A DNA stretch of 62,437 bases, taken from positions 168,095-230,531 of the forward strand of contig NC_068985.1 in NCBI RefSeq assembly GCF_001194135.2. The letters run 5' to 3'. The stretch is from Octopus bimaculoides (lineage: Eukaryota). A program made the position numbers and the translations under genes. Of this stretch, positions 1,755 to 39,855 are shown piece after piece (the stretch's first letter is position 1; every line of letters starts with the position of its first letter). The notes beneath the pieces are model-generated. The model ran no database searches. It was given only the letters and a program-made list of their open reading frames with translations, and was not told where the DNA came from.

Positions 1755-2024
1755 TCAAAGTAAGCCAATGGAGATTATAAGAATAAAAATAAGAGTTAGA
1801 GATGGTGCTCTTGGAGGATTTGCAGTTCCTGTATAATAGGTATGTGGATAAATCTTTATCTGTACTATGGTGGTTGTAGTCTTTGAGCAAGGTTGTGGGG
1901 TATGTATTGGACGTTTTTTACATAACTGTTCTGATGGAGGCCGAAGCCAAATATGAATTCCATTGATTTGGAAATTTTTATTCAACATACATGCTGGTAA
2001 ATAATCTTTCTGAAGTCCAGTGAA
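1755..2024 (-). CDS. Terminal coding exon (F), 89 aa plus TGA
   Basis: Acceptor tttatttgtttttgcag|TTC, phase 0; open frame FTGLQKDYLPACML...GIHIWLRPP...TGTANPPRAPSLTLIFILIISIGLL*, part of ORF 1755..2066. Confidence 0.9.
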   Translation of the reverse strand, partial: FTGLQKDYLPACMLNKNFQINGIHIWLRPPSEQLCKKRPIHTPQPCSKTTTTIVQIKIYPHTYYTGTANPPRAPSLTLIFILIISIGLL

Positions 2025-2089
2025 CTGCAAAAACAAATAAAAAGAAAACAAATAAATAACAAGCATATATCAATATTTGAAAAATATCT

Positions 2090-2755
2090 ATGCATATCAA
2101 ACAAAATCCTGCCAAAAATGATCTGCCATTCAAACCAAAAAGAATGAAGCTGTTCCATTTCTTTTATGGTTTTACCTCTTTTCTTGGTGATTACAATGCT
2201 CTTATCCCTGGAACAGTATTTTGGATATGAGCTAAAATCCATTCCTTGTCATGAATAGTTGTAAATACCATTGTCCATTGAGCCATAAGCATGAGCGATT
2301 GCTACCATCTTTTCACCTTTTCATAGTGTTTGATTATTGCCATTTTATCATCCAAAGGAACTGTATTACACTGAAGGTCACCAGGATTATATTTAGAAGT
2401 AGGGCCTTTTGTGAGGGCATGGTGGTTTAAGAAAAGCACAAATTTATACACAGTAAACATAAATGCATGCTTGAATTTCCTGGTACACACTACAATGCTA
2501 CCTTACAGTGGAAGGCTAGAACTATTGCTCCTGTTAACCATGTAAATAGTCTAAACTTTGTAATATGTATATTTTAAAAAATTATTAGCTTTTATCTGCT
2601 TTTATCAATAATCTGCTCATATTTTCATATGTATTTTATTTGATTTTCCACTCCAATACTGGTTTTTAAAAGAAAATTTTTTTATTCTTTTAAATACGTT
2701 TGCTGACATGAACAGAACACATCAGATAAATTGACTTAAGTTGAGGTGTATTTTT
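2090..2755 (-). mobile_element. Tigger/pogo transposon 5' half (HTH-psq/CENP-B-type N-terminus, decayed)
   Basis: Frameshifted VPLDDKMAIIKHYEK...KSIVITKKRGKTIKEMEQLHSFWFEWQ; TIR-like tgacttaagttgaggt at 2732-2747. Confidence 0.75.
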
Positions 2756-2949
2756 TTCCATTGATTTCTTTAAAAGCAGATAGTGTACATCACCTGACAG
2801 CAGGGTCACCAGTTCAATGATCTCCGGTTACTATGTTTACATATCGTAGCCATTTGTGAGACAAAAATTTTGAAACTGAAATTACTCACCCTGCTTCTGA
2901 ACAATTACGAGGGTGTATTCATTTATCTTGATATGAGTGACATGGAGTA

Positions 2950-3985
2950 TTCATCATCATCATTATGCATTCGTTTTCCATGAAGGTATGGGTTGGACAG
3001 TTAGACGGTAGTTGGCCGGTGGAAGAGCTGTCCAGGCTCCACTTGTCTGTTCTGGCATGGTTTCTATGGCCGGATGATGTCCTTCCTAACGCCAACCACT
3101 TTACAGCGTTTACTGGGTGCATTTTACAGCGCACCAGCACAGGGGTTTTGTACTTGGCTCTGAACAAGTGCTTTTCTGCTTGGCACTGGTACAGGTGCTT
3201 TCTATGTGACACTGGCATGGGTGCTTTCATGTGATGCCAACACCTGTGAACCCTAAGGACAAGGATCACTTGGCTGATAGAGGGATGTGCCTGTATGTTT
3301 AGATGGACAAGATTTTACTTTGCTTGATGTGTCTTCCCAAGCACAGCAAAGCTCCAGAAACCTTGTCATCTCCTCAGCATCTGAAGATCCTTTCTCACCA
3401 CTTCATCCCATTTGTCTATTTTCCTACTTACTAGGACTTTGGTCCTTGCTCCATCAACTCTAAGGCCCTTAGCTTCTAGACCTTGCTTCCACACTTGAAA
3501 TTTCTCTAACTTTGGTAGCAATTCAGTTATAAGAACATGGTCATCAGCATAGAGGAGCTCCCAAGGGCAGCTAGTTTTAAATTCTTGTTATGGCCTGGAG
3601 GACTATCATAAACAAGAGGGGGCTGAGAACCAATCCTCAGTGTACTCGTACACTAAATTCCTTGCTATACTCATTGCCGACTTGCACCTTACTGACAGCA
3701 TCCCTGTACAACTCTCACCAACCACTCATCTCTCCCAGCTTCCACATTGCCCATCAAATAAGGGTGCAGGGGAAGTTGTCAAAGGCTTTTTTCATGTCAA
3801 CAAAAGCCAAATGCTGAGTTTTATTTTGGCTAAATAGTTCTCCTGTACTTGCCTTACCTGGAAGATAGCATCAATAGTGCTATCTTCTACCAGGCACAAA
3901 ACCAAACTGCATCTCATCTAGACTAACTCTCTGCCTAATTAATTGAGCTATGACCCTTCATCACCTGGTCAAGCAATTTGATACC
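2950..3985 (-). mobile_element. RTE-clade LINE remnant (RT fragment plus 3'UTR and GAT tail)
   Basis: Reverse strand reads GCPWELLYADD near 3545-3575; shared 3' end and (ATC)n at 2950. Confidence 0.85.
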
Positions 3986-4429
3986 TCTGTAATTATTTCT
4001 TAAAATCTGGGCCTGGAAACAAATATGATCTTTTCAGATCTTGGTGGTTAAAAAGGAGCGCATTCAAACTCAACATCCAGTGCAGAAAGCCCAGCTGCTA
4101 CATGTAACAGTAAAAGCCAGTAAAAAGGTTTTCTGTTCAGACGGCTTAGAAAAATAAAATCAACAACAGTGGCACCCAGTGAAAGGAGTTGCTGGTCCCA
4201 AGGCAGCTCCCTGGTACGAGACCTTGTCGGGTAAAAACCAGGAAGTGTTTAAGAATAAGTCACTCTACCAAGATAACCAAGAGATATATAAACTCCCTCT
4301 CCCAGCCAGAACCAGCAGAGAGAAATTAGAGTCACACTTAAATCGACCAACAATAAAGGAAAGAACAACCAGGAAGAACCCTATCACAACAATGCTGCCC
4401 TCTCGATGAGAATAAGACAGAGGATGTCC

Positions 4430-5515
4430 AGCAATCAATAGTCAAGAAGTACTGTAAAGAGAAGCAAGTTCCATTTGAGATTCTCTGCGAAATGTCCTGG
4501 ACTTTCATCATAATATCACTTTTGTTTATATACCTCCTAACACCACTTCTTTACTGCAACCTATGGGACCTGGCTAGCATTTCTAAGTGTTACTTCCAAA
4601 GGCAGGATGTACTCAGGCAGGATGTAATAGCAACTGAAACGGAGGAAGGCACCACACTCTATGATTTTTGGAAGACATAATATTTGTAAGGCTATTCTTA
4701 GTATCAACTCAACATGGAAGAATGTATCAGAAATGTTTATGAATGCCATTTGGAAGAAACTGTGCATCGAATTTGAGGACAATTTCAAAAGCTTTGACGG
4801 TTCAGATGCAAATAGAGGAGAACCTTGTTGAAAGAACTAAAAATGGATTTGGAGGAAGAAGATTTCAATGCATTAAATGATGCTGTCATACAACCACTCA
4901 CAAATGAAGAGTTAATGGATCTTCATGAACAGAAACCATGAGAAGAGCAGCAACCAGAATGAGAACAAAAACATTTCATCACTAAAATGCAGCAAGCTTT
5001 TATGTATATTAAGAAATTACTAGCCATTTTCGAGGGGTTGCATCCTGATCCTGAATGCTTGGCTAAAGTTATGGGGGCTCTTCACACCACTTATGCTCCT
5101 TATTGGGTTATCCTAGATGATAAAAGTAAAACTATTTCACTATTCCAGACAAGTTTTTGCTGCACATTGAAAGTTGACTGAATTGGAAACCTCTGATGGC
5201 CAACCTGTTCCTTTGACATCAATGCTGTAATCCATGCTTCTCCTCCAACCTCCTTTTCTGACCACTCAAGCACATTGAAAGCAGCAATCAGGTAAATGAT
5301 TCTATATTTTTAAAATTCTTTGGTTCTTTTATTATTTCTTGACATTCACAATTTTTTTTATTTGTATTTAAATGTTTAAAATACAATATTTTATACCAGC
5401 TTGAAGTCTTTTTTTAATGAATTTCGATGACTTTTTTACATGATTTTTTCCTGTCATGTTTTTGAGTTAAGTCATATTTTGGAAGCAAACACTGACATAA
5501 GTTGAGGTACACCTG
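4430..5515 (+). mobile_element. Tigger/pogo transposon 3' half (DDE region plus TIR)
   Basis: YCKEKQVPFEIL...TSLLQPM...TTLYDFWKT...MNAIWKKLC; ends tgacataagttgaggtacacctg followed by TA. Confidence 0.85.
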
Positions 5516-5739
5516 TACACATTTATTTGCTTAAAATATCAGGTGAAATTTGTTGAGGTAGTCTATCCTTCTTGTTGCCATCAAGTTAATGTTTACAAGC
5601 AAGTTAATATTTCCACATGGCCAGACATGTTTTTACAGGCTAGAAATGAATGACATTGCCTGTAGGATGATGATGATGCATGCTTGCAATAAGTGCATGA
5701 TATCAAGACAGGGTATAGACAAACGCATGCATGCACACA

Positions 5740-5915
5740 CACACACAAACACACACACATATCTATATAAACCCATGTATACATAGACACACAATGGCCC
5801 TCTTTCAGTTTCTTTCCACTAAGTCCATTCAATAGGTTTTGGTCAGTACAAAGCTACAAGTGGAAGAAACATGCCCAAGATATCATGTGGTCGGCTTGAA
5901 CATGAGACTACATAA
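5740..5915 (-). mobile_element. Partial tRNA-headed SINE
   Basis: Degenerate reverse match to the 5' half of the SINE at 38712-39125. Confidence 0.6.
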
Positions 5916-5968
5916 CTTTACCATACATCAGATACATACATAAACATACATGCATGCTTATGTATGTA

Positions 5969-7224
5969 TTAGATCATCAAGTATGACACTTGTAGAAAAG
6001 AAAGGAAAGTTTGTGCTTTATAAATACAAGGAATAGTTTTATTCATCGAAGTATGCACCCATATTATCAATACACTTTTGCCATTTCAGCAGTAGCTTGT
6101 CCAGCCTGGAACTGTAAAAGCCTGGCAACAAAATCTTGGAAGGCCTGTTTCACAGCGTCATCGAAATTAAATTTTTTCCTATCAAAAAGTTATCCAAATT
6201 CTGGAAGAAGTGGTTGTCAGTAGGGGCAAGATCAGGTGAATATGATGGATGAAGGAGAACTTCCAGCTCCTGTACTTTTGCCAATGTCATTTTTGTGATG
6301 TGTAATCTGGCATTGTCTTGCAATAAAATAGGAGTGGATCTGTTGACTAATCTCGGCTGCTTTTTTGTAAGTTTCTGCATCATTTGGTCCAGTTGGCTGC
6401 AGTATACTTTGGCCGTGATTGATGAGCCAGGTTTAATGAAATCCTAATGGATCACACCTACACCAGGCCATCAAATACACACCATCAGCTTCTTTTGATT
6501 AATTTTGCTGTGTTTTGGTGGTTTGTCTTTGTCCAACCATTGTGCTGAACATTTACGGTTGTTGTATTGGATCCATTTCTCATCACATGTTACAATTCGA
6601 TTAAAAAATGATTCATTTTTGTGGCGAGAAAGTAGCTTAATGCAGGCTTCCAAACGTTACTGTTTCTGATTTTCATTGAGTTCATGTGGAACCCACTTAT
6701 CCAACTTTTCCACTTTACCAATTTGAACTAGGTGAGTCAATATTGTTTGCTCGCTAACACCAAACAACAACGATAATTCACGGGCACTTTGAGATGGATC
6801 TGACTGAACGGTGCCTTCCAGTTCGTCATTATCCACCTTTGTTTCTGGCTGACCACGCTGCTCATCTGTGAAGTCAAAGTTACCAGAATGAAATTTTGCA
6901 AACCAATTTGATACTGTCTGCTGTATAATAACGTTAGAATGAAATACTCCTTTAACATTCCAAGCAGTCTGTGATGCTGTATTTCCAAGAAAGAACTCAT
7001 ATTTCAAAACTGTACGAATTTCCAACTTATCCATCTCTAAACAAAAATAGCAAAAAATGATTTTTAAATACTTTATAAAGTACAAAATGAGTTAGAACAA
7101 AGAAATAGATGTGTCAGCTTTCTAACAAAAAATAAAGATTATCAAAATATAAGAATGGTGCAAAATGAGCAGCTGTCAAAGTTTACCATCTACCTTACTA
7201 CAAATTTCATACTTGGTGACCTAA
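5969..7224 (-). mobile_element. Full-length mariner (DD34D) element with both TIRs; transposase 7034-6039 broken by stops and frameshifts
   Basis: TA-flanked TIRs ttagatcatcaagtatgacacttg and (reverse complement) ttaggtcaccaagtatgaaatttg; MDKLEIR...WVPHEL, IVTCDEKW, LLQDNAR, HPSYSPDLAPTD. Confidence 0.95.
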
Positions 7225-7427
7225 TATATATGTATATATGGAGATAAATGTTATATATCATATATTAACATTGGTTATGAATATACTGATGTATACCTGA
7301 ATAAATACCTAATGAAACAGACATATCATTAGTCTGTTTATCTATCAATTTTTCTACGCGCACTTGTGCATATGCAGACACAGACACAAGTATAAACGTT
7401 TGTTTATGTGTGTAATATATATTTGTA

Positions 7428-7968
7428 TCATCATCATTTAATGTCTGTTGCCCATGCTGGCATGGGTTGTACGGTTTGACCAGGGCTGGCAAGTTGGAAG
7501 GCTGCACCAGATTCCAGACTAATTTGGCATGGTTTTTACTGCTGGATGCCCTTCTTAATGCCAACCACTCTGAGAGTGTTTTACATGCCAGCAGCATGGG
7601 TGGCATCTTCGTGACACCGGTGTCTGCCACAACTGCAATTTTACTTGGTTTGATTAGTCTTCTTTTCAAGCATGACACAATGCCAAAGATATTGGTCATT
7701 GTCTCCCAACACTTGAAAGGGGCTTTTCACGTGCCACTACCATCAGTCATGTTGCCTCTATGAGGCCCAATGCTCGAAATGTGCTTTTTACATTCCACTG
7801 GCACAGGTGCCAATTTTGTGACACCAGCATCAGCAATGACGGTTTCACTTGGCTTGATGGGTTTTCTCAGGCACACCATATTGCCAAAGGCCTCAGTCAC
7901 TAGTCATTGCCTCCATGAGGCCCAAAGTTCGAAGATCATACTTCACCACCCCGTCCCATGTCTTCCTC
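7428..7968 (-). mobile_element. 5'-truncated RTE 3'UTR copy
   Basis: (ATC)n then tttaatgtctgttgcccatgctggcatggg...ggatgcccttc; a second short tail lies at about 8028-8080. Confidence 0.85.
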
Positions 7969-8394
7969 TGAGTGTGTATATATATATATATATCTATATA
8001 TATCTATATATTTTTATATGTATATTTGTATCGTCATTTAATGTCCATGTTCCATGCTGGCATGTGTTGGATGTTTTGATAAGACTCCGATGTGTCTAAG
8101 GACTGTATATATGTCTGTGTGTTATATTACAGCAGAAGTAGTATTAGTTTAAAACAGTGATCTGTGTATCACACTAAATGCAGATAAAACACAGAAAACC
8201 AAATTAACTGCAGTATTTGTCCTGAGAAAACAGGCCAACAAAGTTTTTTTCTTTGCTGTCAAGAACTTTGAACCTGAATTAGGGTTTTGACTCAGAATCT
8301 GAATATAACATCTGTTTACTACCATCACATCAAGATTTTAAGATCCTGGACCCAAAGAATTTCATTGTTTTTTTTTTTGTTTTCAATAAAATAG

Positions 8395-10526: not shown

Positions 10527-10583
<57 letters not shown>

Positions 10584-11393: not shown

Positions 11394-11569
11394 TGCATAC
11401 AAATTTGGTGGAAGATAATACCAATCCAGGCCAAATTTATTATTTTTTGGTGGCTTCCCTTGAAACATCCACCCAAAGGCACCCAATTTTCCATCAGTGT
11501 ATGTGAGAAATACAGGGTATAGTTCTTCACAGTTTAACTTCTTTGAAAGGTTCATGAAATAATGTGTTC
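11394..11569 (-). CDS. Internal exon E (phase 1 to 0)
   Basis: ttttttatgcag|GA ACA CAT TAT ... TAT GCA|gtaagt; encodes (G)THYFMNLSKKLNCEELYPVFLTYTDGKLGAFGWMFQG...LYA. Confidence 0.92.
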
Positions 11570-14847: not shown

Positions 14848-15021
14848 CCATTTTTGCAACACATTCTGCTTTTTTCCATTCTTTTGATAATTTTTCCAGC
14901 TTCAACGGTATCTCCATGTATTCCTTTTCTGGATCGTTACCCATCTGTATGTACAAGCCTTTATATTCTTTTGCATCTTGAGCACCAGGGTTACAGATAA
15001 GTCGAGGGTGTTTAAAATAAG
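14848..15021 (-). CDS. Internal exon D (phase 1 to 1, 174 nt)
   Basis: tttgttaaatttcag|CT TAT TTT ... AAA ATG G|gtaaga; encodes (A)YFKHPRLICNPG...LYIQMGNDPE...WKKAECVAKM. The ORF track misses it. Confidence 0.92.
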
Positions 15022-16599: not shown

Positions 16600-19222
16600 C
16601 ACTCTTCTAGGAAGACAACTGTGATGGGGCAGGAGGCATTGGCATACTTTTAGCAGAGAAATGGATAAGTAAGGTGATAAGCAAGGTAGTCAGATTATGT
16701 GACAGGGTACTTAAGCTCTGACTAATCTGGTGACCATGCTAGCCAGATCGACTACATTCTCACCAGAAAGTGGATTCATGGCTGCTCATAAATGCAAAGT
16801 CCTTCCCCAGTGAAGAGTGTACCCCTCAGCATAGGCTACTCATTAGTGACTTCAAACTGCAGGCACAAAGGATTCCAGGAAGCAAGCTAGTTTGGAAAAG
16901 AAAAAATCTGGAAACTTAAGGATCTTTTGAATAGTCAAAGGTTTAGGGATTTCCTAATTGAAGGATTTGATGAGAAGGAGAAGTTACAGACTTGCAATAT
17001 CGAGGATAACTGGAAGTTCCTATGAGACAACTTATTGAAAGCCACAGACCAAATTTGTGGGTGGTGCAAAGTCCCAACCATTCCGAGAGTTATATGGTGG
17101 TGGAGCAATGTAGTTGACAGGGCCATTGGAGCTATATCAGGCAGCTAGAAAGGAAGCTAGGTAGCAGGTATACTTAGCCAGGGGTGAAGCAGAAAGGAAG
17201 AAGTTTGCCAATGTTCTGCAGTGTGAGGATCAGCAGCTTGAAGGGTTTCAGTTTGCAAGACAGTGTGCCAGAGGAGATTGTGATGTTGCGGGAGAGAAGT
17301 GTGTTCACAGTAAGTGACTCTGCAAAGAAAGAGGCTATGAAAGGCTACTAAATATAGAGAACTCATGGGAAAAGGAGAGGCTGCCTGATGTTGATCTAAG
17401 AGAAGGGACCAGCAATCCGAATAGGACAGTAGCGTTGTAGACAAAGCCATGAAGGATATGAAAATGGGGAAAGACCCTGACCCATGAGGAATAATCATTG
17501 AGATACTTAAAATATCTGGCAGTGTGGATTATGGTCTAGTTACTCCTATAGTTAATCAGGTGGTGTATGAAAGAGTCATACTCAATGACTGGTATACCAG
17601 CATCATAGTCAACTGCTACAAAGGTGAAGGTGATGCTTTAAATAGAAATAATTTTAGAGGCATCAAACTGTTGGATCAGGTGCTAAAGTCATGGAGAGGG
17701 TCATAACCCAATTAATTAATGAGAGAGTTAGTCTAGATGAGATGCAGATTGGTTTTGTGCTAGGGAGAAGCACCATTGATGTTATACTTCTGGTAAGGCA
17801 GCTGCGGGAGAAGTACCTCGCCAAAGATAAACCTCTATCCTGGGCTTTTGTTGACATGGAGAAAGCCTTTGACAAGGTCCCTTGATCCCTTATCTGGTGG
17901 TCAATGAGGAAACTAGGGATATATGAGTGGTTGGTGAGAGTTGTACAAGCCATGTACAGGGACACAATAAGTAAGGAGTGAGTTGGCAATGAGTGTAATG
18001 ATAAATTCAGGGTACAAGTAGGGGTTTACCAAGGATCATTTAAGATGGGCTGCCCCTGGGAGCTCCTCTATGTTGATGACCTTATTATTATAGCTGAATC
18101 ACTACTGGAACTAGAGAAGAAATTTCAGGTGTGGAAGCAAGATCTAGAATCGGAAGGTAAAAACCAAAGTATTAGTAAGTAGAAAAGCAGACAAACTACA
18201 AATGCCTTGAAGTAGATGGCTCTACTCGACCTGTGAGAAAGGCTTAGGTAGAAATTCCATAAGCTATGGACACGTAAGAGGTGCAGCAATATCAGGGGAA
18301 GGTTAACTAGGAAAATAGTTTTTGTGTGTGGAAGGTACAAAAGTACAATAAACACTGAAAATGTACAGAAAATAGACTCCATCAAACGCCAGTAGGGTAA
18401 GCTGAAGATAGTTGATAGCTTGTGTTATCTGGGTGACCCAGTCAGTAGTGGAGGTGGATGCTCCAAGAGAGTAGCAGCAAGAATAGGAATAGGCTGGACA
18501 AAGTTCAGAGAGCTCCTTACTTCTGCTGACAACAAAAGGGCCTCTCTGTCAGAGTGTAAAGCAGGCTGTATGATGCCTGTGTGTGCACAGGCTATGCTAC
18601 ATGGTAGTGCAGCATAAGTTGTGGCTGCTGAGGTCATGCGTAGGCTTGAAAGAAATGAAACCAGTATGCTTTGCTGGATGTGCAATGTCAGTGTGCATCT
18701 ACGACAAGATGTAAACATCTGGAGAGAAAAGTTTAGCATAAGAAGCATCAGATGCAAGAGTGATGACTACACTGGTATGGCCTAGTGATGTGTATAGATG
18801 AGGACAGCAGTATGAAGAAGTACAGATATCTAACTGTGGAGGGAACCTGTGGAAGGGGTAGACCCAGGAAGACATGGGACGAGGTTGTGAAGCATGATCT
18901 GTGAATGTTGGGCCTCAAAGGGGCAATGACTTGCGACCGAGACCTTTGGCAATATGCTGTGCTTGAGAAGACCCATCAAGCCAAGTGAAATCTTAGTCAT
19001 GGCAGATACTGGTGTCACGTAACTGGCATCTTGGCTGGTGCTACGTAAAAGGTACCCCTTACACACTCAGAGTATTTGGTGTTAGGAAGGGCATCTAGCC
19101 ATAGAAACTGTGCCAAATCAGACTGGAGTACAGTGCAGCCCCTCAACTTAGCAGCCTTGGTCAAACTGTTCAACTCATGCCAGCATGGACAATGGACGTT
19201 AAATGATGATGATGATGATGAT
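16600..19222 (+). mobile_element. Long decayed RTE LINE (linker, RT, 3'UTR, tail)
   Basis: WWSNVVDRA, RGIKLLDQV, QIGFVLGRSTID, AFVDMEKAFDKVP, GCPWELLYVDD, LCYLGD, GRPRKTWDEVVK; (GAT)n at 19205-19222. Confidence 0.93.
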
Positions 19223-19250
19223 ATAGATATATATATATATACATACAAGC

Positions 19251-19300
<50 letters not shown>

Positions 19301-20419
19301 GTAATATAATATGTGACAATTATTTGGTCGGAGCAGTTGCAGTTTTTTGCCCCGACATCCGAAACTCAGAGTCTTACAGATAAATTCCTCTATTTACATG
19401 ATATTGAGGTCTCATTCTTTCTTTTGTTGTCTTACCATTACCATTAATATGTATATATATATATATACATGCACACACACTGTATCTCTTGAGCTGATTC
19501 CTTCATGATTGCACTGCAACTATAGCTGATTTTCAAAGAATTCTCACGCTGAACCTTGCTAATTAGATCAGGCATGCAGTGACATGTGAGAAGTATATGA
19601 AACAGAAATCTAATCAAATACACCAAACGAAACGAAACAGGTGATAAAAAAATATTTAAACACTCCAACAATTTAAAACTATTTCCTTAACCAAAGAATT
19701 CTTGTCATAAACACTTGACTATCCAAGGGGTGCAACTCACATTTAAATAGCGAAGAGTTATCACTCTTCCCAAAGCAGCTGCATTCATCCGTAAGCAACA
19801 TTTTTTTTGTTTTCTTGGAAAATCATAAGCTGCTAATGACCATCTTGAGTTATAACCTAAGACTACTTGAGTAACGAAGTGGTGATTGCTGGAATAAGCT
19901 CAATTATATATCTTTCTTGAAACATGAAACTCAAGTTGTCATAAATGTTATAAAATACTGTATACACATATTCATAAGTCTCAAATGTAATGGAATACTT
20001 TAATTTGCTCAGCCTAAAAGAAAAAAAAACAGGATGTGTGTGTGTGTGTTGCTAAGCCTACATTTGCTATCATCCATAACATCCTTGACGCACTATAATT
20101 TTCTTGATGCTCTTCGCGTATCTCTCTATTTCTCATCTTTCTACTGTCTGTGCTAATGGCACTCTAACTCTTCGTTTGGTCTACGTATAAAAGACTACAT
20201 CACACTCTCCTCATCACTTCTCCTCTATCTTCTATCATTTGACCTATAAATAACCGATTGTGCCAAACTGTCTCTACCCAATACACAGTAACTTAGTGTT
20301 TCAGTACTGACAATAATCCCTCTCTCTTTCTCTCCTCCACTACCTCCCACCCTACCCTGCTTGATTCCACATTTTCTTATCCATATTCTCCTCAACATCC
20401 ACATTTTACACTGTCCTCC

Positions 20420-20885: not shown

Positions 20886-21315
20886 AAAGTGAGAGTACTA
20901 TACCAACTTACTGAAGTAGTTATGAAAAGCTATCAAGACCAAATACCCAACAAAACTGACAAAAGGGGCCTTGTTTCTTCAGGACAATGTTCCAGTACAG
21001 AAGTCATTGGTTTCAATGTCTGCTGCTGTGCATGTTTGTGGCTTTGATCTCCCTCCCTATTCTCCTAGTTTAGCTCAATCTAACTCTCATCTGTTCCCCA
21101 ACATGGAAAAACACTGGGCTGGGAACCAGTATCACAGTGATGATGATGTCATATTTGCTGTTGATGACTTTGAGCAATAGGATGAAAGCTTATTAACCAA
21201 TGGGATCTAAGCACTGCAATACTGATGGAGGAAGTGTATGGACCACAAGGGGAACTATGTTGAAAAATAAACCTCATTTGGTCACATTCTATGAGAATAT
21301 TTTGGTAAGCCTGCT
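20886..21315 (+). mobile_element. Mariner transposase 3' fragment
   Basis: LFLQDNVP...LPPYSPSLAQSNSHLFP...WRKCMDHKGNYVEK*. Confidence 0.85.
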
Positions 21316-21729
21316 GGATCTTTTTGTTTTATTACTATTTTGATTTGATGTGTTTTCCTAAATTTGTAGGCTCGTTAACCTTTGGATGTTGCATCACNNN
21401 NNNNNNNNNNNNNNNNNNNNNNNNNNNNNNNNNNNNNNNNNNNNNNNNNNNNNNNNNNNNNNNNNNNNNNNNNNNNNNNNNNNNNNNNNNNNNNATATTT
21501 TGGTAAGCCTGCTGGATCTTTTTGTTTTATTACTATTTTGATTTGAAGTTTTGTGTGATGTGTTTTCCTAAATTTGTAGGCTCGTTAACCTTTGGATGTT
21601 GCATCACTCTTTGGAATCTGGATTTGTCACACCAGGAGTTTTTTGTAGTTCAGGTTTTTTTTTGTTTTTCTTTTAGGTCTTTTCCAGAATTTGCTCATGT
21701 ACATGGGACACACTTGTTTAGATATCATT

Positions 21730-23035
21730 GCCAATGATGTTCCAAACATCATTTTGTCTTCTTTATATACTCTGATCCAATCTCATTAGCTGTATCCAGA
21801 AAATTGCATGCAGTGGATAAAAATCTGTACATGAAATGAAGGTGGTAGAGGCCTGAGATCAGTTTAGACGGCCTTCATATGGTATCAATCAGGCAACATC
21901 TGCTAAACAACAGCAGCAAAAATAAATATATAAATGCAATGCTGAAAAGTGAAGTGAGCAACATTATAGGAGTTGGCATTGAAACCCTCAAGAAACGCTC
22001 TCTTCCTGATGATCTCCTATATAGCCCCAAAACAGCTAGGCTCTCTTACCCCAGAGAAGCCCTGGATGGAAAGCACTCAACATACAAAAATAGACCATGC
22101 ATGGGTATGTTGTCTGGAAGCTTGAAGAAGACAGTAGAATTAACATGAAACACAGCCTCTCTTGGACACAAGACCACTACATCACACTTTGAAGGCTATG
22201 CATTTGCAATCCAGGAAGAGGAAATTGCTCCGAAGTACCTGGTGAATAAGAGAGACAGTGATGCTCTTGCAGTCCCAAGGTGCAACCACATGTCTAGGCT
22301 ATGTCATGTTTCTGTGGAAGACATCATGCATGTAATTAGCAGCTGTCCTAAAATGTCATCACGGTTCTACTTCCCTATGTGGCACAATGTTGTTGCTAAA
22401 ACAATTTTCAATGCTATCTGCAAAAGAGACTGTCCTGAAATAAACTTAGAAAATCCCTCAGTTATAAAATTTATTCATAAACACCAATTCAAGGGATACC
22501 GGTGGAATATTCCCATCAAAACATCTGTCAAATTTAAAACATAACAGACTGGATATTGTTGTTTGGGACAGTGGAGCAAAGGTATGTACCGTCGTAGGGG
22601 TCAGCTCCCCTGCAGATATAGATATCTCTTTGAAAATCAAAGAAAAAGAGGCTATCTATGGACAACTGCTTCAAAACCTCCAGCTTCTTTATCCAAACTA
22701 TGAATTCATATTCCTACCAATAATAATTGGAGCATTAGGTTTTGTTCGTAAATGCTTAAAGGAGAATCTGGATAAACTGGGATTTTCAGAAAGAGAAATC
22801 AACCGGCTAATTTGTACATTACAAGTGCAATCTGTGAGTGGAACAGTAAAAATATGCAAGACTTTTCTCAAGTTCTGAACGTGAATTTGTCTGTGTTAAC
22901 TACATCCCAAAGATGGAGCCTTGTATTTTGTTGGAAACTGGTTCTCTCCTCAGTGTAAGATTTATAATCATTAAAAAATAGAGACATACATACATGTTTG
23001 GAGACAGCAAAAATAGGACACTCACTCGCACAGGG
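21730..23035 (+). mobile_element. 5'-truncated RLE-type non-LTR retrotransposon (R4/Dong or NeSL-like)
   Basis: EGYAFAIQEEEI; zinc knuckle (S)RLC..EDIMHVISSC; WHNVVAK; LDIVVWD..CTVVGVSSPAD; PIIIGALG. Confidence 0.88.
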
Positions 23036-24062
23036 GCAATAAACACCAAAGATGTACAGAAAATAGATTCCATCACATGCCAAGGGAAAAACCAGAAGTT
23101 GTTGATAACTTCTGTTATCTAAGTGACCAAGTCAGTAGCAGGGATGGATGCTTTGTGAGCATGGCTGCTAGAATAAGAATAGCCTGGGCAAAGTTCAGAG
23201 AGTTCCTACCTCTGCTGGTAACAAAGAACCTCTCACTTAGAGTAAAAGGTAGACTGTATGATGCATGTGTACGGACAGCCATGCTACACGGCAGTGAAAC
23301 ATGGGCTGTGACTGCTGAGGATTTGCATAGGCTTGAAAGAAATGAAGCTAGTATGATCCGCTGGATGTGTAATGTCAGTGTGCATGCACCACAGAATGTA
23401 AGCACCCTGAGAGAAAAGTTGGACAGAAGAAGCATCAGATGTGGTCTGCAGGAGAGATGGCTTCAATGATCATGTGGTGTGTATGGATGAGGACAGCGGT
23501 GTGAGGAAGTGCCACACCCTAACAGTGGAAGGAGTCTGTGGATGAGGTAGACCCAGGAAGACCTGAGATGAGGTGGTGAAGTATGATCTTCAAACGTTGG
23601 GCCTCATGGAGGCAATGACAAGTGACCGAGACCTTTGGAGATATGCTGTACTTGAGAAGACCCAGCAAACTAAGAGAGATTGTATCTGTGGCCTATGCCA
23701 ATGTCATATAACTGCCCTGTTTAAAAGCAGCCTTCAATCGTTGGGCAATATGCTGTGCTTGAGAAGACCTGTTGAGTCAAGTGAAATTTTTGTCATGGCC
23801 AATGCCATTGTTGCCTGACTGGTACCCATGCCAGTGGCACGTAAAAAGCACCATTCAAGCATGGTCATTGCCAGTGCCACCTGACTGGCCCCGATGCTAG
23901 TGGCATATAAAAACACCCACTACACTCTCAGAGTGGTTGGCACCAGGAAGGGCATCCAGCTGTAGAAAATCATGCCAGAACAGACTGAAGCCTGGTGCAG
24001 CCTCCTAGCTTGTCAGTCCTCAATCAAACCGTCCAACCCATAAATGATTATGATGATGATAC
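23036..24062 (+). mobile_element. RTE LINE 3' end
   Basis: ORF 23077..23469 FCYLSDQ...KGRLYDACVRTAMLHGSETW; 3'UTR and GAT tail. Confidence 0.92.
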
Positions 24063-24389: not shown

Positions 24390-24516
24390 CTGTAAGAGTA
24401 TATAACTTTACATCTTTCTTAATGGTCTCACCCACCATAAATGGAGGCATCGTTTTTGGTGATGGAATGCGTATAGTGTTATTGTTAGAGTCAAAACCTT
24501 CCAAACGGCCTTTGAT
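24390..24516 (-). CDS. Internal exon C (phase 0 to 1)
   Basis: tctgaatttcag|ATC AAA ... CTT ACA G|gtaagt; encodes IKGRLEGFDSNNNTIRIPSPKTMPPFMVGETIKKDVKLYTLT, within ORF 24334..24591. Confidence 0.88.
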
Positions 24517-27383: not shown

Positions 27384-27481
27384 TGCTGACTGAAGTCCTA
27401 CAATCAAACCATTGTTGTCATATATAGGCTGTGAGAGAAGGTCATCGGGTCGCTGCCAAAGAAAACCATGATAATATTTTG
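27384..27481 (-). CDS. Internal exon B (phase 1 to 0)
   Basis: aattttctttgcag|CA AAA TAT ... TCA GCA|gtaagt; encodes (T)KYYHGFLWQRPDDLLSQPIYDNNGLIVGLQSA. Confidence 0.9.
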
Positions 27482-27969: not shown

Positions 27970-28008
<39 letters not shown>

Positions 28009-30458: not shown

Positions 30459-30504
30459 NNNNNNNNNNNNNNNNATATATATATATATATAAAACATATA
30501 TATG

Positions 30505-30680: not shown

Positions 30681-30849
30681 GTATATATGTGCAACCACAG
30701 TTTCTGTCAAATAATAATAATAATAAGTTATTGGTTAACTTGAGTCAATGGTAGAAGTCACCAAGTTGCTGCTGCACTGTGGGCCTGAGACTAAGATTGT
30801 GAAGTGATCTTTACAATGATGCCCACACCTCAGCCATGCTTCTGTCTCA

Positions 30850-33240: not shown

Positions 33241-33249
33241 TGTAATTCA

Positions 33250-34210: not shown

Positions 34211-34639
34211 TTTTGATTCCATTTTAAGATCGGTTCAGTATGAATTCAAAATGCAAAATCACATTTTTGTCAACAGGAAAAAACAACAACAATATCTGTG
34301 TACAAACAGTACATTAGATCCATTGAGGGTTGTGACACTCCTACTTGGGTCCTTAATCTGTCTATAAAAAAAAATCACAACAAATTACAAGCTACACTAC
34401 AGTATCCTTTGGTTATCACAGATTGCCCAGAGACCAATTTACTGAACAAATGTACAAGTAAAAATGCATACTAGAGGTAAAGGATCTGCTGGACATACAA
34501 GGGGCATACATTTTGTCGCAGCAAATTCTAAGCCTGCTCAGTCACCATTACTTGAAGAAAAATCCCTTTCAAACAACTAAAGAACTACACAACTCTGTTA
34601 AACATGACTGCAACATCATATTAAGACTATTTTTCCAAT

Positions 34640-36115
34640 CTAATCTGGACAGCACTGGCATCGGCCATGACTATGATTTCAATGGATCTTCATAAGCACA
34701 GCATGTCACCCAATGATTGAAGGGTGCTTTTAACGGGCCAGTTATGCAACACTGGTATCAGCCATGACTATGATCTCACTTGGCTCGACAGGTCTTTTCA
34801 AACACGCCATGTCTCCAAAGGTCTTGGTTGCTTATTATTACCTCTGTGAGGCCCAATGATTGAAGGTCATACTTCACCATCTCATCTCAGATCTTCCTGG
34901 GTCTACCTCTTCCACAGATTCCTTCCATTGTTAGGGTGTGACACTTCTTCACACAGCTGTCCTCATCCATTCACAACACATGCCAATACCAGCACAGTTG
35001 TCTCTCCTGCAGACTACATCTGATGCTTCTTCTGTCCAACTTTTCTCTCAGGGTGATTACATTCTGTGGTGCATGCACACTGACATTACACATCCAGTGA
35101 GGCAAACTAGCTTCATTTCTTTCAAGCCTATGCATGTCCTCAGCAATCACGGCCCGTGTTTCACTGCCATGTAACATGGCTGTTCGTACACATGCGTCAT
35201 ACAGTCTGCCTTTTACTCTGAGTGAGAAGCCCTTTGTCACCAGCAGAGGTAGGAATTCTCTGAACTTTGCCCAGGCTTTTCTTATTCTTGCAGCCACACT
35301 CACAGAGTATCCACCCCCACTACTGATTTGGTCACCAAGGTAATGGAAGCTATCAATTACTTCTAGTTTTTCTCTCCTGGCATGTGATGGAAGCTGTTCT
35401 CTGCACATTTTCAGTGTTTATTGCCCCCAAGTATTTGCCACACACAAAAACCATCTTCCCAGTTAACCTTCCTTTGATATTGCTGTACCTCTTATGTGTC
35501 CATAGCTTACACTGAGTACATTTTATAGAGTTTCTACCTACGCCTTTTCTACAGATTGAGCAGAGCCATCTACCTGAAGGGATTTGTGATTTGTATGCCT
35601 TTCTACTTGCTAAGACTTTGTTTTTTGCTAGCTTAACTCTAAGGCCCTTCAATTCTAGACCATGCTTCCACACCCGAAACTTCTCTAGTTCTGGTAGTGA
35701 CTCAGCTATAAGAGCAAGGTCATCAGCATAGAGGAGCTCCCAGGGGCATCCTGACTTGAATTCCTCTGTTATTGCCTGGAGGATTAAATGGAGGCTGAGG
35801 ACTGATCCTTGGTGAACCTTTACTTGTTCCCTGAATTCTTCACTGTACTCATTGCCAGCCCTCACCTTACTGCCAGCATCCCTGTACATGGCTTGTACAG
35901 CTCTCACCAACAACTCTATCCCTAGTTTCCACATTGACCACCAGATAAGAGACCCCCTATCAAAAGTTTTTTTTTTCCATGTCTTTGGCTATGTATTTCT
36001 TCTGCAGTTGCCTTACCAGAAATATAGCATCAGTGGTGCTTCTCGCTGGCACAAAACCAAACTGTATCTCATCTAAACTAACTCTCTCCCTAATTAGTTG
36101 GGCTATGACCCTCTC
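34640..36115 (-). mobile_element. Best-preserved RTE RT region in the window
   Basis: ORFs 35353..35934 (HQGSVLS, GCPWELLYADD, Cys/His cluster) and 34971..35408 (FHYLGD, KGRLYDACVR). Confidence 0.95.
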
Positions 36116-36299
36116 CGTGACAGATATCAGAAATAATCAATCCCCAATATGCTCTTAATTATACAATCATTAAAAAGTAAATAAATTAAACTAATTTTAG
36201 TAATTATGCCTAGAATATGAAGATGATGTCATTACACAACTTTATTCCGGTTACATTCGTTTCCTGTGACCAGAGGAAGTATTTCATAGCTATAAATTG

Positions 36300-36915
36300 G
36301 TTTGTATGGGTGCTTTTTGCGTGGCACCAGCAACCATGAGCCTGCAAGGTTAGGAATGCTCAGCTGGAGAGAGATGCCAGGGACAGCCTGCATACAAGGA
36401 TAACCATGCTTTTACTGAGCTTCACATGTTTTTTTCAAGAACAGCAAACCACCAAGAGTCTCTGTCCCCTGTCATCCGCTCTGTGAGTCCTAACGTCCAT
36501 AGATCCTTTCTCATGATTTCATCCCACATCTTCTTGGGTCTACCCCTTCCACATGTTCCCTGTACAATTTGAGATCATCATCTCTTGATGCAGCTGTCTT
36601 CATTCATATACATTACCTTTGCCATACCAGCACAGTCTTCTCTCTTGCACACTTTGTATGATGTCTTGTATATCCAATTTTCTCACAAGTCACTTACACT
36701 CTGTCGTATATGCTTTTGCATGTCCTCAGTAGTCACAACCCATGTCTCACTGCCATGTAGCATAGCTGTTTGTACATAGGCATCATACAATCTACCTTTC
36801 ACTCTGATGGAGAGGTCCTTCATTATGAACAGTGGTAGTAGCTCTCTGAACTTTGCTTAGTCTATTTGTATTCTAGCAGACATGCTTTCACAACAATCTC
36901 TCCACTACTATTGAT
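36300..36915 (-). mobile_element. RTE 3' fragment of another subfamily
   Basis: Reverse KGRLYDAYVQTAMLHGSETWVV and GRPKKMWDE; distinct 3'UTR. Confidence 0.8.
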
Positions 36916-37001
36916 CACTTAAGAAACAGCAACTGTCTACTCCCCACTGACATTTGAGTGAGTCCTGGGTACAGGTACATGGAGGGACACAGCACTGTTG
37001 C

Positions 37002-37081
37002 TTTGAGACTGCAACCTGTTGACTGACAAAATTCTGTGCTGCATCACGGAATTTTGTCAGTGAACAGGTCACAGTCTCAAA
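37002..37081 (-). other. 80-nt hairpin, 37-bp stem and 6-nt loop
   Basis: tttgagactgcaacctgttgactgacaaaattctgtg / cacggaattttgtcagtgaacaggtcacagtctcaaa; 33 of 37 positions are Watson-Crick. Confidence 0.85.
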
Positions 37082-37179
37082 ATGACGAAAATATTTTGGC
37101 AAATTAAATTTAAATGTTGAAGTGAATCTAACGGTTTTTGTGTGTTTCTTAAATAGCTTATAAATACCTTCCACGCTGC

Positions 37180-37670
37180 AATTATATCTATAAAACTTAC
37201 TGGAAACTACAGACCAAATCTGTCACTGGTGTAAAGTTCCAACCTGACCTAGGGTGACATGATGGTGGAACAACGCAGTTGACAGGGCCACTAAAGCAAA
37301 GAAACAAGCCTAGAAGAACTGGAAGGGTGACATTAGCAAAAAACTACATTAGATAGCTAGAAGGGAAGCTAGTAGGTAGGCATACTTAGGTAGGAGAGAA
37401 GCAGAAAGGTAGAAGTTTGCCAATGTTCTGTGGCATGAGGACTGGTGGGTTGAGGTGTTTTGGTTTTCAAGACAGTCATCATCATCATCATCATCATCAT
37501 CGTCATTTAACGTCTGCTTTCCATGCTGGCATGGGTTGGACGGTTTGACTGAAGACTGGTGAGCCAGAAAGCTGCACCAGGCTGCAATCTGATCTGGCAA
37601 AGTTTCTACAGCTGGATGCCCTTCCTAACACAAACCACTCCGAGGGTGTAGTGGGTGCTTTTACGTGCAC
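37180..37670. mobile_element. Plus-strand RTE linker fragment (37180-37470) abutting a minus-strand RTE tail (37475-37670)
   Basis: WWNNAVDRATKAKKQA, KFANVL; then (ATC)n tttaacgtctgctttccatgc. Confidence 0.8.
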
Positions 37671-37689
37671 AATCTGCTTCCCACACCCC

Positions 37690-38000
37690 TAAAAATGCCT
37701 AAAATATCATCTAGAAAACCAAAGATCATGATTGGAAATTTCAATAGCCACAACATGTAGTAGAGACACAAAGACAGCAACCAGCAGAGAGGGAAATGCA
37801 GTTGAAGTAGGGGCTGAAAATAACAAGATTAATTTGGTCCACATTACTGAGGGGCTGAAAATAACAAGATTAATTTGGTCCACATTACTGAACAACCAAA
37901 GTCCTTCTACAGTAGTTAATTACAGTCAAAGTACATGGCTTGATTAATTCTCACTAGCTGTTCATTTATTCCTAGCTTCTGATCAAGGACTGAAAGTGCC
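37690..38000 (+). mobile_element. APE endonuclease fragment of a non-RTE LINE with a 41-bp tandem duplication
   Basis: IMIGNFNSHN...GNAVEVGAENNKINLVH resembles IIxGDFNSH...W; 37810-37850 is identical to 37851-37891. Confidence 0.6.
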
Positions 38001-38711
38001 TGTCAAAGGCTTTCTCCTGGTCACCAAATGCCTAACAGAGCAATTTAGATTTAGAGAGATATTGTGATGCTTGCAAATGTTGTAGGGGCTTGAAGTTATA
38101 GAGGCTGATATGGCTGAGCTGCTTGTGCCTCATTGAGATAGATTATTTAATGAGGAGCTGATGCTGTTTAAAGAAGAAGATGAGAATACAGAAATTCCAT
38201 CAACTGAGTTCATACATTGAGTTGTACAAAGAGATGATGCACCATAAGCATCACACAAGTCTGGATAAGTTCTTTGTTCCCTCTTTGTGGATATTGATAA
38301 CAATGAACTATAAGACAAAAGACAGTGTTCCTCATCCTCTGAGTAACTTGCATTTCACCTCAACCACTTTCTCTGAAACACTAATCAACATCTTCTGTGG
38401 TAAGAACATACCCTATCATACTATGATTCTTATTGACTCCCTAACATATTTCTCTTCTGATGTTTTCATGTATGGATATTGTATTGTGTATGTTTATTTA
38501 GAAATTATTTCTATGCATAAAAATGGCTGTGTTGCTGGTTTGTTTTCCTTCTTTCTGTTGAAAAATCTGTTATAACAAAATGATTTTCCTATTTCAGGAT
38601 TCCTGAGTTATGACAAATCTTTCTTCCATGACATGATGGATTCTTGTATTCTATTCTTCGTATGCAACTTGATCATGTAACAGGAACACCATAAGAAGGA
38701 AACACAAACAT

Positions 38712-39125
38712 AGGCACAGGAGTGGCTGTGTGGTAAGTAGCTTGCTTACCAACCACATGGTTCCAGGTTCATCCCCACTGCATGGCACCTTGGGCAAGTG
38801 TTTTCTACTATAGTCTTGAGCCGACCAAAGCCTTGTGGGTGGATTTGGTAGACAGAAACTGAAAGAAGCCCGTCGTATATATGTATATATATGTATATGT
38901 ATGTGTGTGTATGCATTTGTGCGTCTGTGTTTGTCCCCTCAACATCGTTTGACAACCGATGGTGGTGTGTTTACATCCCCATAACTTAGCGGTTCAGCAA
39001 AAGAGACCGATAGAATAAATACTAGGCTTCCAAAGAATAAGTCCTGGGGTTGATTTGCTTGACTGAAGGCGGTGCTCTAGCATGGCTGCAGTCAAATGAC
39101 TGAAACAAGTAAAAAAGTAAAAGAG
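38712..39125 (+). mobile_element. Full-length tRNA-headed SINE with central (TA/TG)n
   Basis: ggcacaggagtggctgtgtggtaag (A box) ... ggttcatccc (B-box-like) ... caccttgggcaagtg ... gactgaaacaagtaaaaaagtaaaaga. Confidence 0.9.
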
Positions 39126-39768
39126 CTGCAAGCATTTCACCATCTTTTCTTAGTAAAGGTAATTTGTTTAAATGTTTTCTTCATATATGAGTGGGACATA
39201 TTATAAGAGACCAATATTATCTCTTTCCTTCTTTCACCCCTCTATTTCATTTTTTTCCCAACCCCCACTCATCTATTCTCCTTCATTTTCTTTTCTCCAG
39301 GTTTTGCCTTAAGAAGTAGAGCTTTTTGATCTTTTGTCCTTGACCATTTGGAAATGAAAAATTCTGTATCTTCAGCTTAAAATATGATATCGAATAAGTA
39401 GAAATATATTAGTTTCATACGGGAGAGATTTTATTATGGATGTTAGTTACACATGTGGGATTAATATTTAAAATATAACAATCTGATGGAGAATTTTTTA
39501 AAAATGTGGTTAGAGTTGTGTACTAAAATTCCGATGGTCACATTAAAGCATTTACACAGAGAATAAACCCATAATACTGCATCTTGTGTTTGTTTAAAGA
39601 ACGGAAACAAGTTTGAAATGTTTAAGTACAGAAGTTTGGGTTATACATAAACTGAGAGAGCAGGAGAAGTAAGTGAAAATAATGGGATTCAAACCAAGAG
39701 CAGCCAAATAGGAGGAGACCTTATATGAGTATCTGAAAACAAACGATTGAAACAAGAAACAGACTTAC

Positions 39769-39855
39769 TTCGACATACACTATTTTTTCTTTGATAATGA
39801 TTTCTTTCTGCTTCTTGTACTGTGCGTGGTGGTGTGTACCATTTTCCATATCTCA
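39769..39855 (-). CDS. Internal exon A (phase 1 to 1)
   Basis: aattttctttcag|TG AGA TAT ... TGT CGA A|gtaagt; encodes (V)RYGKWYTPPRTVQEAERNHYQRKNSVCR. Confidence 0.87.

What the first reader, a model, noticed from the sequence alone, without database searches (positions are those of the whole stretch)
1755..39855. Hidden six-exon orphan gene: only about 930 coding nt spread over 38 kb of transposon debris
Seen: six exons with canonical splice sites join without stops into a 310-aa protein with 7 Cys and two N-glycosylation sequons (NNT, NLS). Exons A, B and D do not appear in the ORF track. Recall (not a search): the motifs PRT..EA, YD.NG.I.GLQ, AYF..P..IC, LYIQ.G..P, C...MG.HY, PVFL.Y..GKL.AFGW and HIW match a widespread invertebrate family usually annotated only as uncharacterised. 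I know of no assigned function.
Basis: partly seen in the sequence, partly recalled or inferred. Interest (0 to 1): 0.7.

Follow-up and report, generated by a model that had tools for sequence, protein, structure and literature searches.

The report
Annotated octopus surface-glycoprotein gene, function unknown
The six exons are real, but they are exons 2-7 of an already annotated Octopus bimaculoides gene (LOC106868193) that encodes a probably lipid-anchored cell-surface glycoprotein from an old, widespread protein family with no known function.

Summary
Six minus-strand exons (39855-39769, 27481-27384, 24516-24390, 15021-14848, 11569-11394, 2024-1755) have AG/GT borders. They splice into 932 nt and 310 aa, with 7 Cys and NNT and NLS sequons. 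Both assembly gaps are intronic and hide nothing.

The peptide is 100% identical to residues 41-350 of RefSeq XP_052824076.1 (O. bimaculoides LOC106868193), so the gene is neither hidden nor an orphan. That exon is not in the window, and the annotated gene spans 363 kb.

An oyster ortholog has all six introns at the same positions and phases, and decapod cephalopod transcripts carry the uninterrupted ORF. Orthologs occur throughout molluscs. Shorter secreted relatives occur in cnidarians, brachiopods, annelids, nemerteans, amphioxus and protists. All are annotated as uncharacterised.

There is no Pfam, NCBIfam or PDB sequence match. High-confidence AlphaFold models (pLDDT 77 and 91) have no significant Foldseek neighbour in PDB.

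Best reading: a signal peptide, a three-disulfide alpha+beta ectodomain, a Thr-rich stalk and a GPI-type C-terminal tail. Its biochemical activity is unknown. The mollusc clade has lost an acidic residue that is invariant in the short family. Interest is modest.

The parts
39769..39855 (-). It starts in phase 1 (the TG of Met41) and encodes RYGKWYTPPRTVQEAERNHYQRKNSVCR.
   Evidence: Acceptor ttttctttcag| and donor |gtaagt. Identical to XP_052824076.1. The oyster intron has the same position and phase.
27384..27481 (-). Coding exon 3 (B), 98 nt; carries the YDNNGLIVGLQ motif.
24390..24516 (-). Coding exon 4 (C), 127 nt; carries the clade-invariant N-x-T sequon (NNT) and the MPPF motif.
   Evidence: N89, P95, P101 and P102 are invariant in 38 mollusc orthologs. 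Oyster intron match.
14848..15021 (-). Coding exon 5 (D), 174 nt; AYFKHPRLIC ... LYIQMGNDP ... CVAKMG.
11394..11569 (-). Coding exon 6 (E), 176 nt; THYFMNLS (NLS sequon) and PVFLTYTDGKLGAFGW.
1755..2024 (-). Coding exon 7 (F), 270 nt including the TGA stop at 1755-1757. It holds the end of the domain (CM..., GIHIW, last conserved Cys), the Thr-rich stalk KTTTTIVQ, and a 14-residue hydrophobic C-terminal tail, LTLIFILIISIGLL.
39856..62437 (-). 3' part of intron 1. The signal-peptide exon 1 lies upstream of the window.
   Evidence: Exon 1 of XP_052824076.1 and of its orthologs is not found in the window by tblastn or regex. The annotated gene range is 363 kb.
30459..30474 (.). Assembly gap inside intron 2, within a (TA)n microsatellite.
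21398..21494 (.). Assembly gap inside intron 4. The flanks overlap (21297-21397 matches 21495-21607 at 89% identity), so this is probably an unmerged contig join.
44194..44239 (-). First exon of the superseded RefSeq model XP_014768843.1 (MANIIQNWYKEHKSD). It is probably not part of the real coding sequence.
   Evidence: Located. The current RefSeq model and all orthologs start with a signal peptide instead.
6150..7085 (-). Mariner-type transposase remnant in intron 6; an example of the intronic transposon debris.
   Evidence: Pfam HTH_48 at E=9.6e-11 and DDE_3 at E=5.8e-4.
1722..1746 (-). Two candidate polyadenylation hexamers, ATTAAA (1746-1741) and AATAAA (1727-1722), 8 and 27 nt after the stop.
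   Evidence: Motif only; use not shown.

Best explanation
The region holds coding exons 2-7 of Octopus bimaculoides LOC106868193. The gene is very intron-rich, and its first coding exon (signal peptide) lies far upstream of the window.

The product most likely enters the secretory pathway. It would fold into a roughly 260-residue alpha+beta ectodomain held by three disulfides and carrying N-glycans. It would then be tethered to the outer face of the plasma membrane through a short Thr-rich stalk and a GPI anchor added at a C-terminal signal (small residues G-T-A-N, spacer PPRAPS, then 14 hydrophobic residues ending the protein).

The ectodomain belongs to an ancient eukaryotic extracellular family that has no Pfam model and no recognisable solved-structure relative. 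Its biochemical activity is unknown.

In the short secreted relatives a fixed polar set (Asp, Gln, His, Glu/Asp-His, His) suggests a metal or catalytic centre. The mollusc membrane-anchored clade, including this gene, has deleted the acidic residue. I therefore infer that it acts as a cell-surface binding or recognition module rather than as the ancestral enzyme.

Shown: exon structure, identity with the RefSeq protein, family membership, conservation pattern.
Inferred: secretion, disulfides, glycosylation, GPI anchoring, and binding rather than catalysis.
For: - Exons and splice sites.
- 100% identity to residues 41-350 of XP_052824076.1.
- Gene range of 363 kb in O. bimaculoides and 192 kb in Argonauta.
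- All six introns at identical positions and phases (1,1,0,1,1,0) in the oyster ortholog.
- Uninterrupted 342-aa ORF on a 1,245-nt Logan contig of a decapod cephalopod, i.e. a spliced mRNA. Sister sequences are seen on up to 97 contigs.
- Signal peptide in the full-length protein and its orthologs, with N-terminal hydrophobic cores of KD about 3.
- Six Cys conserved from protists to molluscs.
- The N-x-T sequon is invariant in 38 mollusc orthologs.
- Most of the 32 long-clade members examined have a short hydrophobic stretch at or within about 13 residues of the C-terminus, and in the octopods it ends the protein.
- Family breadth: 526 representatives at E<=1e-3.
- Fusions only with extracellular modules (PAN, trypsin, C-type lectin).
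- Acidic residue E/D in 107/107 short-family members and deleted in 23/23 long-clade members; H285 replaced by R in 6/23.
- Confident AF2 models, pLDDT 77 and 90.6.
Against: - No RNA-seq from O. bimaculoides itself was examined. The junctions rest on homology, conserved intron positions and RefSeq models.
- Exon 1 is not in the window, so secretion is inferred from the database protein.
- No GPI predictor or experiment was available. The 14-residue tail could instead be a short transmembrane or tail anchor.
- A few long-clade orthologs have longer or charged C-termini.
- The functional reading of the conserved polar residues was made without 3D coordinates, so whether they cluster is unknown.
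- H205 and H285 are retained in octopods, so catalysis is not excluded.
Confidence: 0.7

Rival explanations
1. The protein is an extracellular, membrane-tethered enzyme. It would be metal-dependent and use the conserved His205 and His285 plus Asp91 and Gln100, acting on an extracellular substrate like its secreted relatives.
For: D, Q, H and H are nearly invariant from protists to molluscs and are retained in octopods. The motif blocks MGxHY, FGW and HIW/HIY are very strongly conserved, which is typical of active-site scaffolds.
Against: The 100% conserved acidic residue of the short family is deleted in every long-clade member. H285 is Arg in 6/23 and H205 is Leu in 2/23. There is no match to any enzyme family by sequence or fold.
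Confidence: 0.2
2. The ectodomain is a LolA/ependymin-like open beta-barrel that carries a hydrophobic (lipid) ligand.
For: The best, non-significant Foldseek hits of the high-confidence model include several LolA-superfamily proteins (9tp6 at E=0.058, plus 3buu and 3bk5) and other hydrophobic-ligand barrels. Like ependymins, this is a secreted, disulfide-bonded, glycosylated family of marine invertebrates. That comparison is from general knowledge and was not tested.
Against: E-values are 0.06-1.4 with probabilities of 0.05 or less, TM-scores of 0.08-0.14 and rmsd of 12-19 A, so there is no real superposition. The octopus model gave unrelated top hits. The Pfam Ependymin model was not hit at E<=5 by any of 39 members.
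Confidence: 0.1
3. The protein is a single-pass or tail-anchored membrane protein, or is simply secreted, rather than GPI-anchored.
For: No predictor was run. Some bivalve and gastropod orthologs have charged residues after the hydrophobic stretch, as transmembrane proteins do.
Against: In cephalopods the hydrophobic run is only about 14 residues, ends the protein and has no cytosolic tail. It is preceded by small residues and a polar spacer, which is the classical GPI-signal layout (general knowledge).
Confidence: 0.2
4. The six exons are a decaying or unexpressed pseudogene, or a prediction artefact in repeat-rich DNA.
For: The exons make up only 2.4% of a repeat-rich span. The older RefSeq model had a dubious first exon.
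Against: The frame is intact and all splice sites are canonical. Protein identity is 77-80% to Argonauta and 70-74% to the decapod protein. Intron positions are conserved with oyster. No repeat overlaps any exon, and there is a single copy in the window.
Confidence: 0.03

Closest known systems
RefSeq gene LOC106868193 of Octopus bimaculoides (XP_052824076.1, 350 aa; older model XP_014768843.1, 325 aa), 'uncharacterized protein'
   Same: It is the same gene. The window's six exons encode residues 41-350 with 100% identity.
   Different: The older RefSeq model replaces exon 1 with a 15-codon exon at 44239-44194 that no ortholog supports.
Mollusc 'long' orthologs, e.g. Argonauta hians LOC106868193-like, Saccostrea cucullata LOC134231150, Aplysia LOC101851793, Mizuhopecten LOC110462080
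   Same: They share the architecture of signal peptide, domain, low-complexity stalk and C-terminal hydrophobic tail. They also share six Cys, the invariant N-x-T sequon, and identical intron positions and phases in oyster.
   Different: Stalk length and composition vary (343-467 aa in total). The genes are far more compact in bivalves (42 kb in oyster against 363 kb in octopus).
Short secreted paralogous family (about 270-300 aa), e.g. Branchiostoma belcheri LOC109472673, Lingula LOC106162480, Nematostella LOC116601181, and Porites, Owenia, Cerebratulus, Stygamoeba and Rhodelphis proteins
   Same: It has the same domain, with E-values of about 1e-37 and weaker to the mollusc profile, six conserved Cys, and the motifs LTAYF..P..IC, MGxHY[WF] and P.FL.Y..G.L..FGW.
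   Different: These proteins end at the last Cys, with no stalk or tail. They keep an invariant acidic residue plus His (the 'EHP' motif) that the octopus clade has deleted. The octopus clade also has an inserted loop carrying the N-x-T sequon.
LolA superfamily / ependymin-related proteins (secreted beta-barrel carriers of hydrophobic ligands)
   Same: Both are extracellular, beta-rich and of similar size. LolA-like structures are the top, non-significant Foldseek hits.
   Different: There is no significant structural or sequence similarity: E>=0.058, TM<=0.14, and no Pfam Ependymin or LolA hit. This is a resemblance only, not membership.

Membership tests
LOC106868193-type mollusc membrane-anchored clade (unnamed; no Pfam model) | Full-length collinear similarity to clade members | tested here: met
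   E=4.5e-180 to 1.2e-51 for six members. 38 mollusc proteins at E<=1.4e-76 with the profile.
LOC106868193-type mollusc membrane-anchored clade (unnamed; no Pfam model) | Six conserved cysteines and the invariant motifs (AYFKHP..C.P, MG.HYF, LYP.FL.Y..G.LGAFGW.FQG, P.CM, N-x-T sequon) | tested here: met
   The invariant columns of A1 and A2 are all present in the window-encoded peptide.
LOC106868193-type mollusc membrane-anchored clade (unnamed; no Pfam model) | N-terminal signal peptide | tested here: inconclusive
   It is present in the full-length RefSeq protein and in orthologs. The exon encoding it is not in this window.
LOC106868193-type mollusc membrane-anchored clade (unnamed; no Pfam model) | Conserved exon-intron structure | tested here: met
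   The six introns have identical positions and phases in the Saccostrea ortholog.
GPI-anchored surface proteins | N-terminal signal peptide plus a C-terminal signal: small omega-region residues, a polar spacer, and a 10-20 residue hydrophobic stretch ending the protein | tested here: inconclusive
   The layout is visible in the sequence: GTAN, PPRAPS, LTLIFILIISIGLL, with best 12-residue KD of 3.27 and 0 residues after it. No dedicated predictor was available.
GPI-anchored surface proteins | Release from membranes by PI-PLC, or a mapped omega-site | not testable with these tools
   Needs an experiment.
Any Pfam / NCBIfam family | Score above the curated threshold | tested here: not met
   No hit passes any threshold for 39 diverse members at E<=5 (Pfam) or E<=1 (NCBIfam).
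LolA superfamily / ependymin | Significant structural superposition on a LolA-like open barrel, or a Pfam Ependymin/LolA match | tested here: not met
   Foldseek best E=0.058, probability 0.03, TM 0.08-0.11. No Pfam hit.
Delta-class carbonic anhydrase (considered because it is a family of extracellular proteins of marine protists with no solved structure) | Sequence similarity to TWCA1/TweCA-delta | not tested
   No delta-CA sequence was available to compare. Among the roughly 150 proteins listed, none of the names that sources give mentions carbonic anhydrase. The paper read gives no sequence features. Dropped as unsupported.

The most novel reading that the evidence does not exclude
The ectodomain may represent a previously undescribed protein fold and an unnamed, ancient eukaryotic extracellular family found in protists, cnidarians, lophotrochozoans and cephalochordates. 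No vertebrate or arthropod protein is among the named hits. The secreted members would be metal-dependent enzymes. A mollusc-specific clade, including this octopus gene, would have been converted into a GPI-anchored, non-catalytic surface receptor.
Probability: 0.2. Interest if true: 0.55.

Novelty: already known. Interest (0 to 1): 0.3.

Why it matters
For genome annotation the result is a correction, not a discovery.

The wider point is modest but real. This is a well-conserved extracellular domain family with hundreds of representatives from amoebae to amphioxus. It shows tandem expansions in amphioxus and gastropods, has no Pfam model and no literature, and gives confident AlphaFold models that match no solved structure. 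That makes it a reasonable target for structural genomics and for asking what a GPI-anchored derivative does on mollusc cells.

It also illustrates cephalopod gene architecture: about 1 kb of coding sequence spread over 363 kb.

Tried and rejected
1. Search for the signal-peptide exon in the window. I used tblastn with Argonauta, decapod and O. bimaculoides exon-1 peptides, and a regex for W..[ILVM][ST] followed by a phase-1 donor. Nothing was found. The gene range of 363 kb explains this.
2. Old RefSeq first exon (44239-44194) as a Tc1/mariner transposase remnant. By eye it resembles the ..FQ(Q/D)DN..H.. region. Pfam and BLASTP against the window's own mariner remnant are not significant, so this stays an unverified lead.
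3. Sequence matches to known families. I tried Pfam on single proteins and on 39 members at E<=5, NCBIfam, and PDB by phmmer and by profile. All were negative.
4. Fold matches. I ran Foldseek with the octopus model against PDB and BFVD, and with the pLDDT-90.6 Branchiostoma model against PDB. No hit has E<0.05 or TM>0.2.
5. Delta-carbonic-anhydrase idea. No support was found and no sequence was available to test it.
6. Literature by locus and accession names for 17 family members and one SRA run. There were zero papers.
7. Conserved nesting inside a tRNA-synthetase gene, as in the oyster locus. No such exons are in the window.
8. Hidden extra or duplicated exons near the gaps. There are none; the ortholog tblastn finds each exon exactly once.
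Full report
**What the window is.** The window is AT-rich eukaryotic DNA (37% GC, CpG observed/expected 0.25) with five runs of N. The ORF list shows many short frames typical of interspersed repeats and microsatellites. Protein searches identify it as Octopus bimaculoides.

**Checking the observation.**
- I read the flanks, located the peptide pieces and assembled the exons.
- The six exons are 39855-39769, 27481-27384, 24516-24390, 15021-14848, 11569-11394 and 2024-1755.
- Each follows a pyrimidine tract plus CAG, and each except the last is followed by GTAAG.
- They total 932 nt (2.4% of 38,101 nt) and give 310 residues once the split initial codon (A|TG) is completed.
- Exons A, B and D are absent from the list of ORFs of at least 70 aa.
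- tblastn with five family proteins finds each exon once, in order, and nothing else.

**The gaps.** Neither gap touches an exon.
- Gap 30459-30474 sits in a (TA)n run in the intron between exons A and B.
- Gap 21398-21494 sits in the intron between exons C and D. The 101 bases to its left recur immediately to its right at 89% identity, which is the signature of two overlapping contig ends joined with Ns.
- The frame is carried by splice phases, not by gap length.
- Orthologs align across the A/B and C/D junctions without any extra segment.

**Not hidden, not an orphan, and not complete.**
- The concatenated peptide hits XP_014768843.1 (O. bimaculoides LOC106868193) at E=4.5e-180.
- Its 90% cluster also holds the current model XP_052824076.1 (350 aa) and the O. 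vulgaris and O. sinensis orthologs.
- The window peptide equals residues 41-350 of XP_052824076.1 exactly.
- Exon A begins at an acceptor site. The missing 41 codons (MLAGSLPSMDLLFLVLAVMLLSLLAATSAQDDELMWSNIS plus the first base of Met41) form a signal peptide. They are not in the window.
- The annotated gene range is 363 kb in assembly GCA_001194135.2 and 192 kb in Argonauta hians. The rest of the window (39856-62437) is therefore part of a very long first intron.
- The older RefSeq model instead starts at 44239-44194 (MANIIQNWYKEHKSD). No ortholog has this N-terminus. By eye it resembles a Tc1-type transposase fragment, but neither Pfam nor BLASTP confirms that.

**Independent support for the splice junctions.**
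- In the Saccostrea cucullata ortholog (locus L002) I solved all six introns exactly. They fall at the homologous residues with the same phases (1,1,0,1,1,0) as in the octopus.
- A decapod cephalopod ortholog (342 aa, 70-74% identical) is encoded without interruption on a 1,245-nt Logan contig, so it is an assembled mRNA. Near-identical sequences occur on up to 97 such contigs.
- I did not examine O. bimaculoides RNA-seq itself.

**Transposon debris.** This is supported as a lower bound.
- 32% of the gene span is repeated within the 62-kb window, at depth up to 89, and no repeat overlaps an exon.
- Pfam recognises mariner HTH_48 (E=9.6e-11) and DDE_3 remnants at 6150-7085. Outside the finding's span, at 48434-48694, there is a borderline RVT_1 match (E=0.01, below the curated cut-off).

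**The family.**
- A profile search finds 38 mollusc proteins (cephalopods, bivalves, gastropods) at E<=1.4e-76, and every name a source gives is only 'uncharacterized', 'hypothetical' or 'unnamed'.
- An exhaustive HMM search of 1.84 billion representatives gives 526 hits at E<=1e-3 and 231 at E<=1e-10.
- Named members include Porites and Dendronephthya (Cnidaria), Branchiostoma, Stygamoeba (Amoebozoa) and Rhodelphis.
- A third search adds Lingula, Nematostella, Hydractinia, Owenia, Cerebratulus and many marine metatranscriptome contigs.
- Several paralogs lie on the same contig in Branchiostoma, Babylonia and Patella.
- A few members are fused to PAN, trypsin or C-type lectin domains.
- Most relatives are about 270-300 aa: a signal peptide plus a domain that ends at the last conserved Cys.
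- The mollusc clade containing the octopus gene adds an internal loop with an invariant N-x-T sequon, a low-complexity stalk and a C-terminal hydrophobic tail.

**Attempts to name the domain.** All failed.
- No Pfam hit passes threshold for single proteins or for 39 members at E<=5.
- There is no NCBIfam hit and no PDB sequence hit by phmmer or profile.
- AlphaFold2 gives a beta-rich alpha+beta model for the octopus protein: pLDDT 77, with the core at 85-95. It gives a very confident model for a Branchiostoma short member: pLDDT 90.6, pTM 0.85.
- Foldseek finds nothing significant in PDB or BFVD.
- The best hit is a LolA-like protein at E=0.058 with TM 0.08, which is not a real superposition.
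- No paper in the searchable library mentions any of 17 locus names or accessions.

**How it probably works.** The following is inference from sequence features plus general cell biology.
- The signal peptide directs the protein into the ER.
- Six Cys conserved from protists to molluscs imply three disulfides, hence an extracellular life.
- The clade-invariant NNT sequon is probably glycosylated.
- The C-terminus is G-T-A-N, then PPRAPS, then 14 hydrophobic residues that end the protein. This has the layout of a GPI-attachment signal, and most of the long-clade orthologs examined carry a comparable tail.
- In the short family, Asp101, Gln110, His212, an acidic residue at 255 (E or D in 107/107) and His285 are essentially invariant. 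That pattern suggests a metal or catalytic centre.
- All 23 long-clade sequences delete the acidic residue, and some replace the histidines.
- I therefore favour a surface-tethered binding or recognition role for the octopus protein over catalysis, with low confidence. Octopods keep both histidines, and I could not inspect the model coordinates.

**Verdict.** The 'hidden orphan' reading is not. The finding is a correctly spliced but 5'-truncated view of an annotated gene of unknown function. Residual interest lies in the family, which is widespread, unnamed and without a structural relative, rather than in this locus.

Noticed in passing
window 44194-44239 (-), context 44150-44400: The superseded RefSeq model XP_014768843.1 takes its first 15 codons from here. 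The open frame continues on both sides (..NGSAIFQDDNVIHMANIIQNWYKEHKSDGKPVGLALHYQ) and looks like a decayed Tc1-type transposase to the eye. Pfam and BLASTP do not confirm this.
   Followed up: partly
window 21297-21607: The 97-N gap at 21398-21494 is flanked by overlapping sequence: the left 101 nt match the right 113 nt at 89% identity with a 12-nt indel. This suggests two contig ends, possibly two haplotypes, that were scaffolded rather than merged.
   Followed up: yes
window 18049-19315, 7808-8086, 37355-37671, 44510-44773, 60503-61399 and many others, both strands: A very abundant short interspersed repeat reaches an intra-window depth of 89. Its translation recurs in many listed ORFs as ..LQSDLAEFLQLDALPNANHSESV.GAF... 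It is often adjacent to (TA)n or (CA)n microsatellites. The repeat family was not identified.
   Followed up: no
window 34670-35952 (-) and 23033-24042 (+): Two copies of one element encode related ORFs (..LPLLVTK.LSLRVKGRLYDACVRTAMLHGSETWAVTAEDLHRLERNEAS..). The first also contains a YADD-type motif suggestive of reverse transcriptase. Pfam gave only weak PHD/C1 hits.
   Followed up: partly
whole window; gene range: About 1,050 nt of coding sequence is annotated over 363 kb in O. bimaculoides, against 192 kb in Argonauta and 42 kb in oyster. Intron 1 alone must exceed the 22.6 kb seen here by an order of magnitude.
   Followed up: partly
L002 (Saccostrea cucullata JAVVLV010013172.1, 71012-115066): The oyster ortholog lies entirely within the range of an opposite-strand class-I tRNA-synthetase gene (Pfam tRNA-synt_1e). 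No corresponding exons are present in the octopus window.
   Followed up: yes
window 50386-51224: The largest gap (839 N) is flanked on both sides by (TA)n and (CA)n microsatellites. It lies in intron 1, outside the finding.
   Followed up: no
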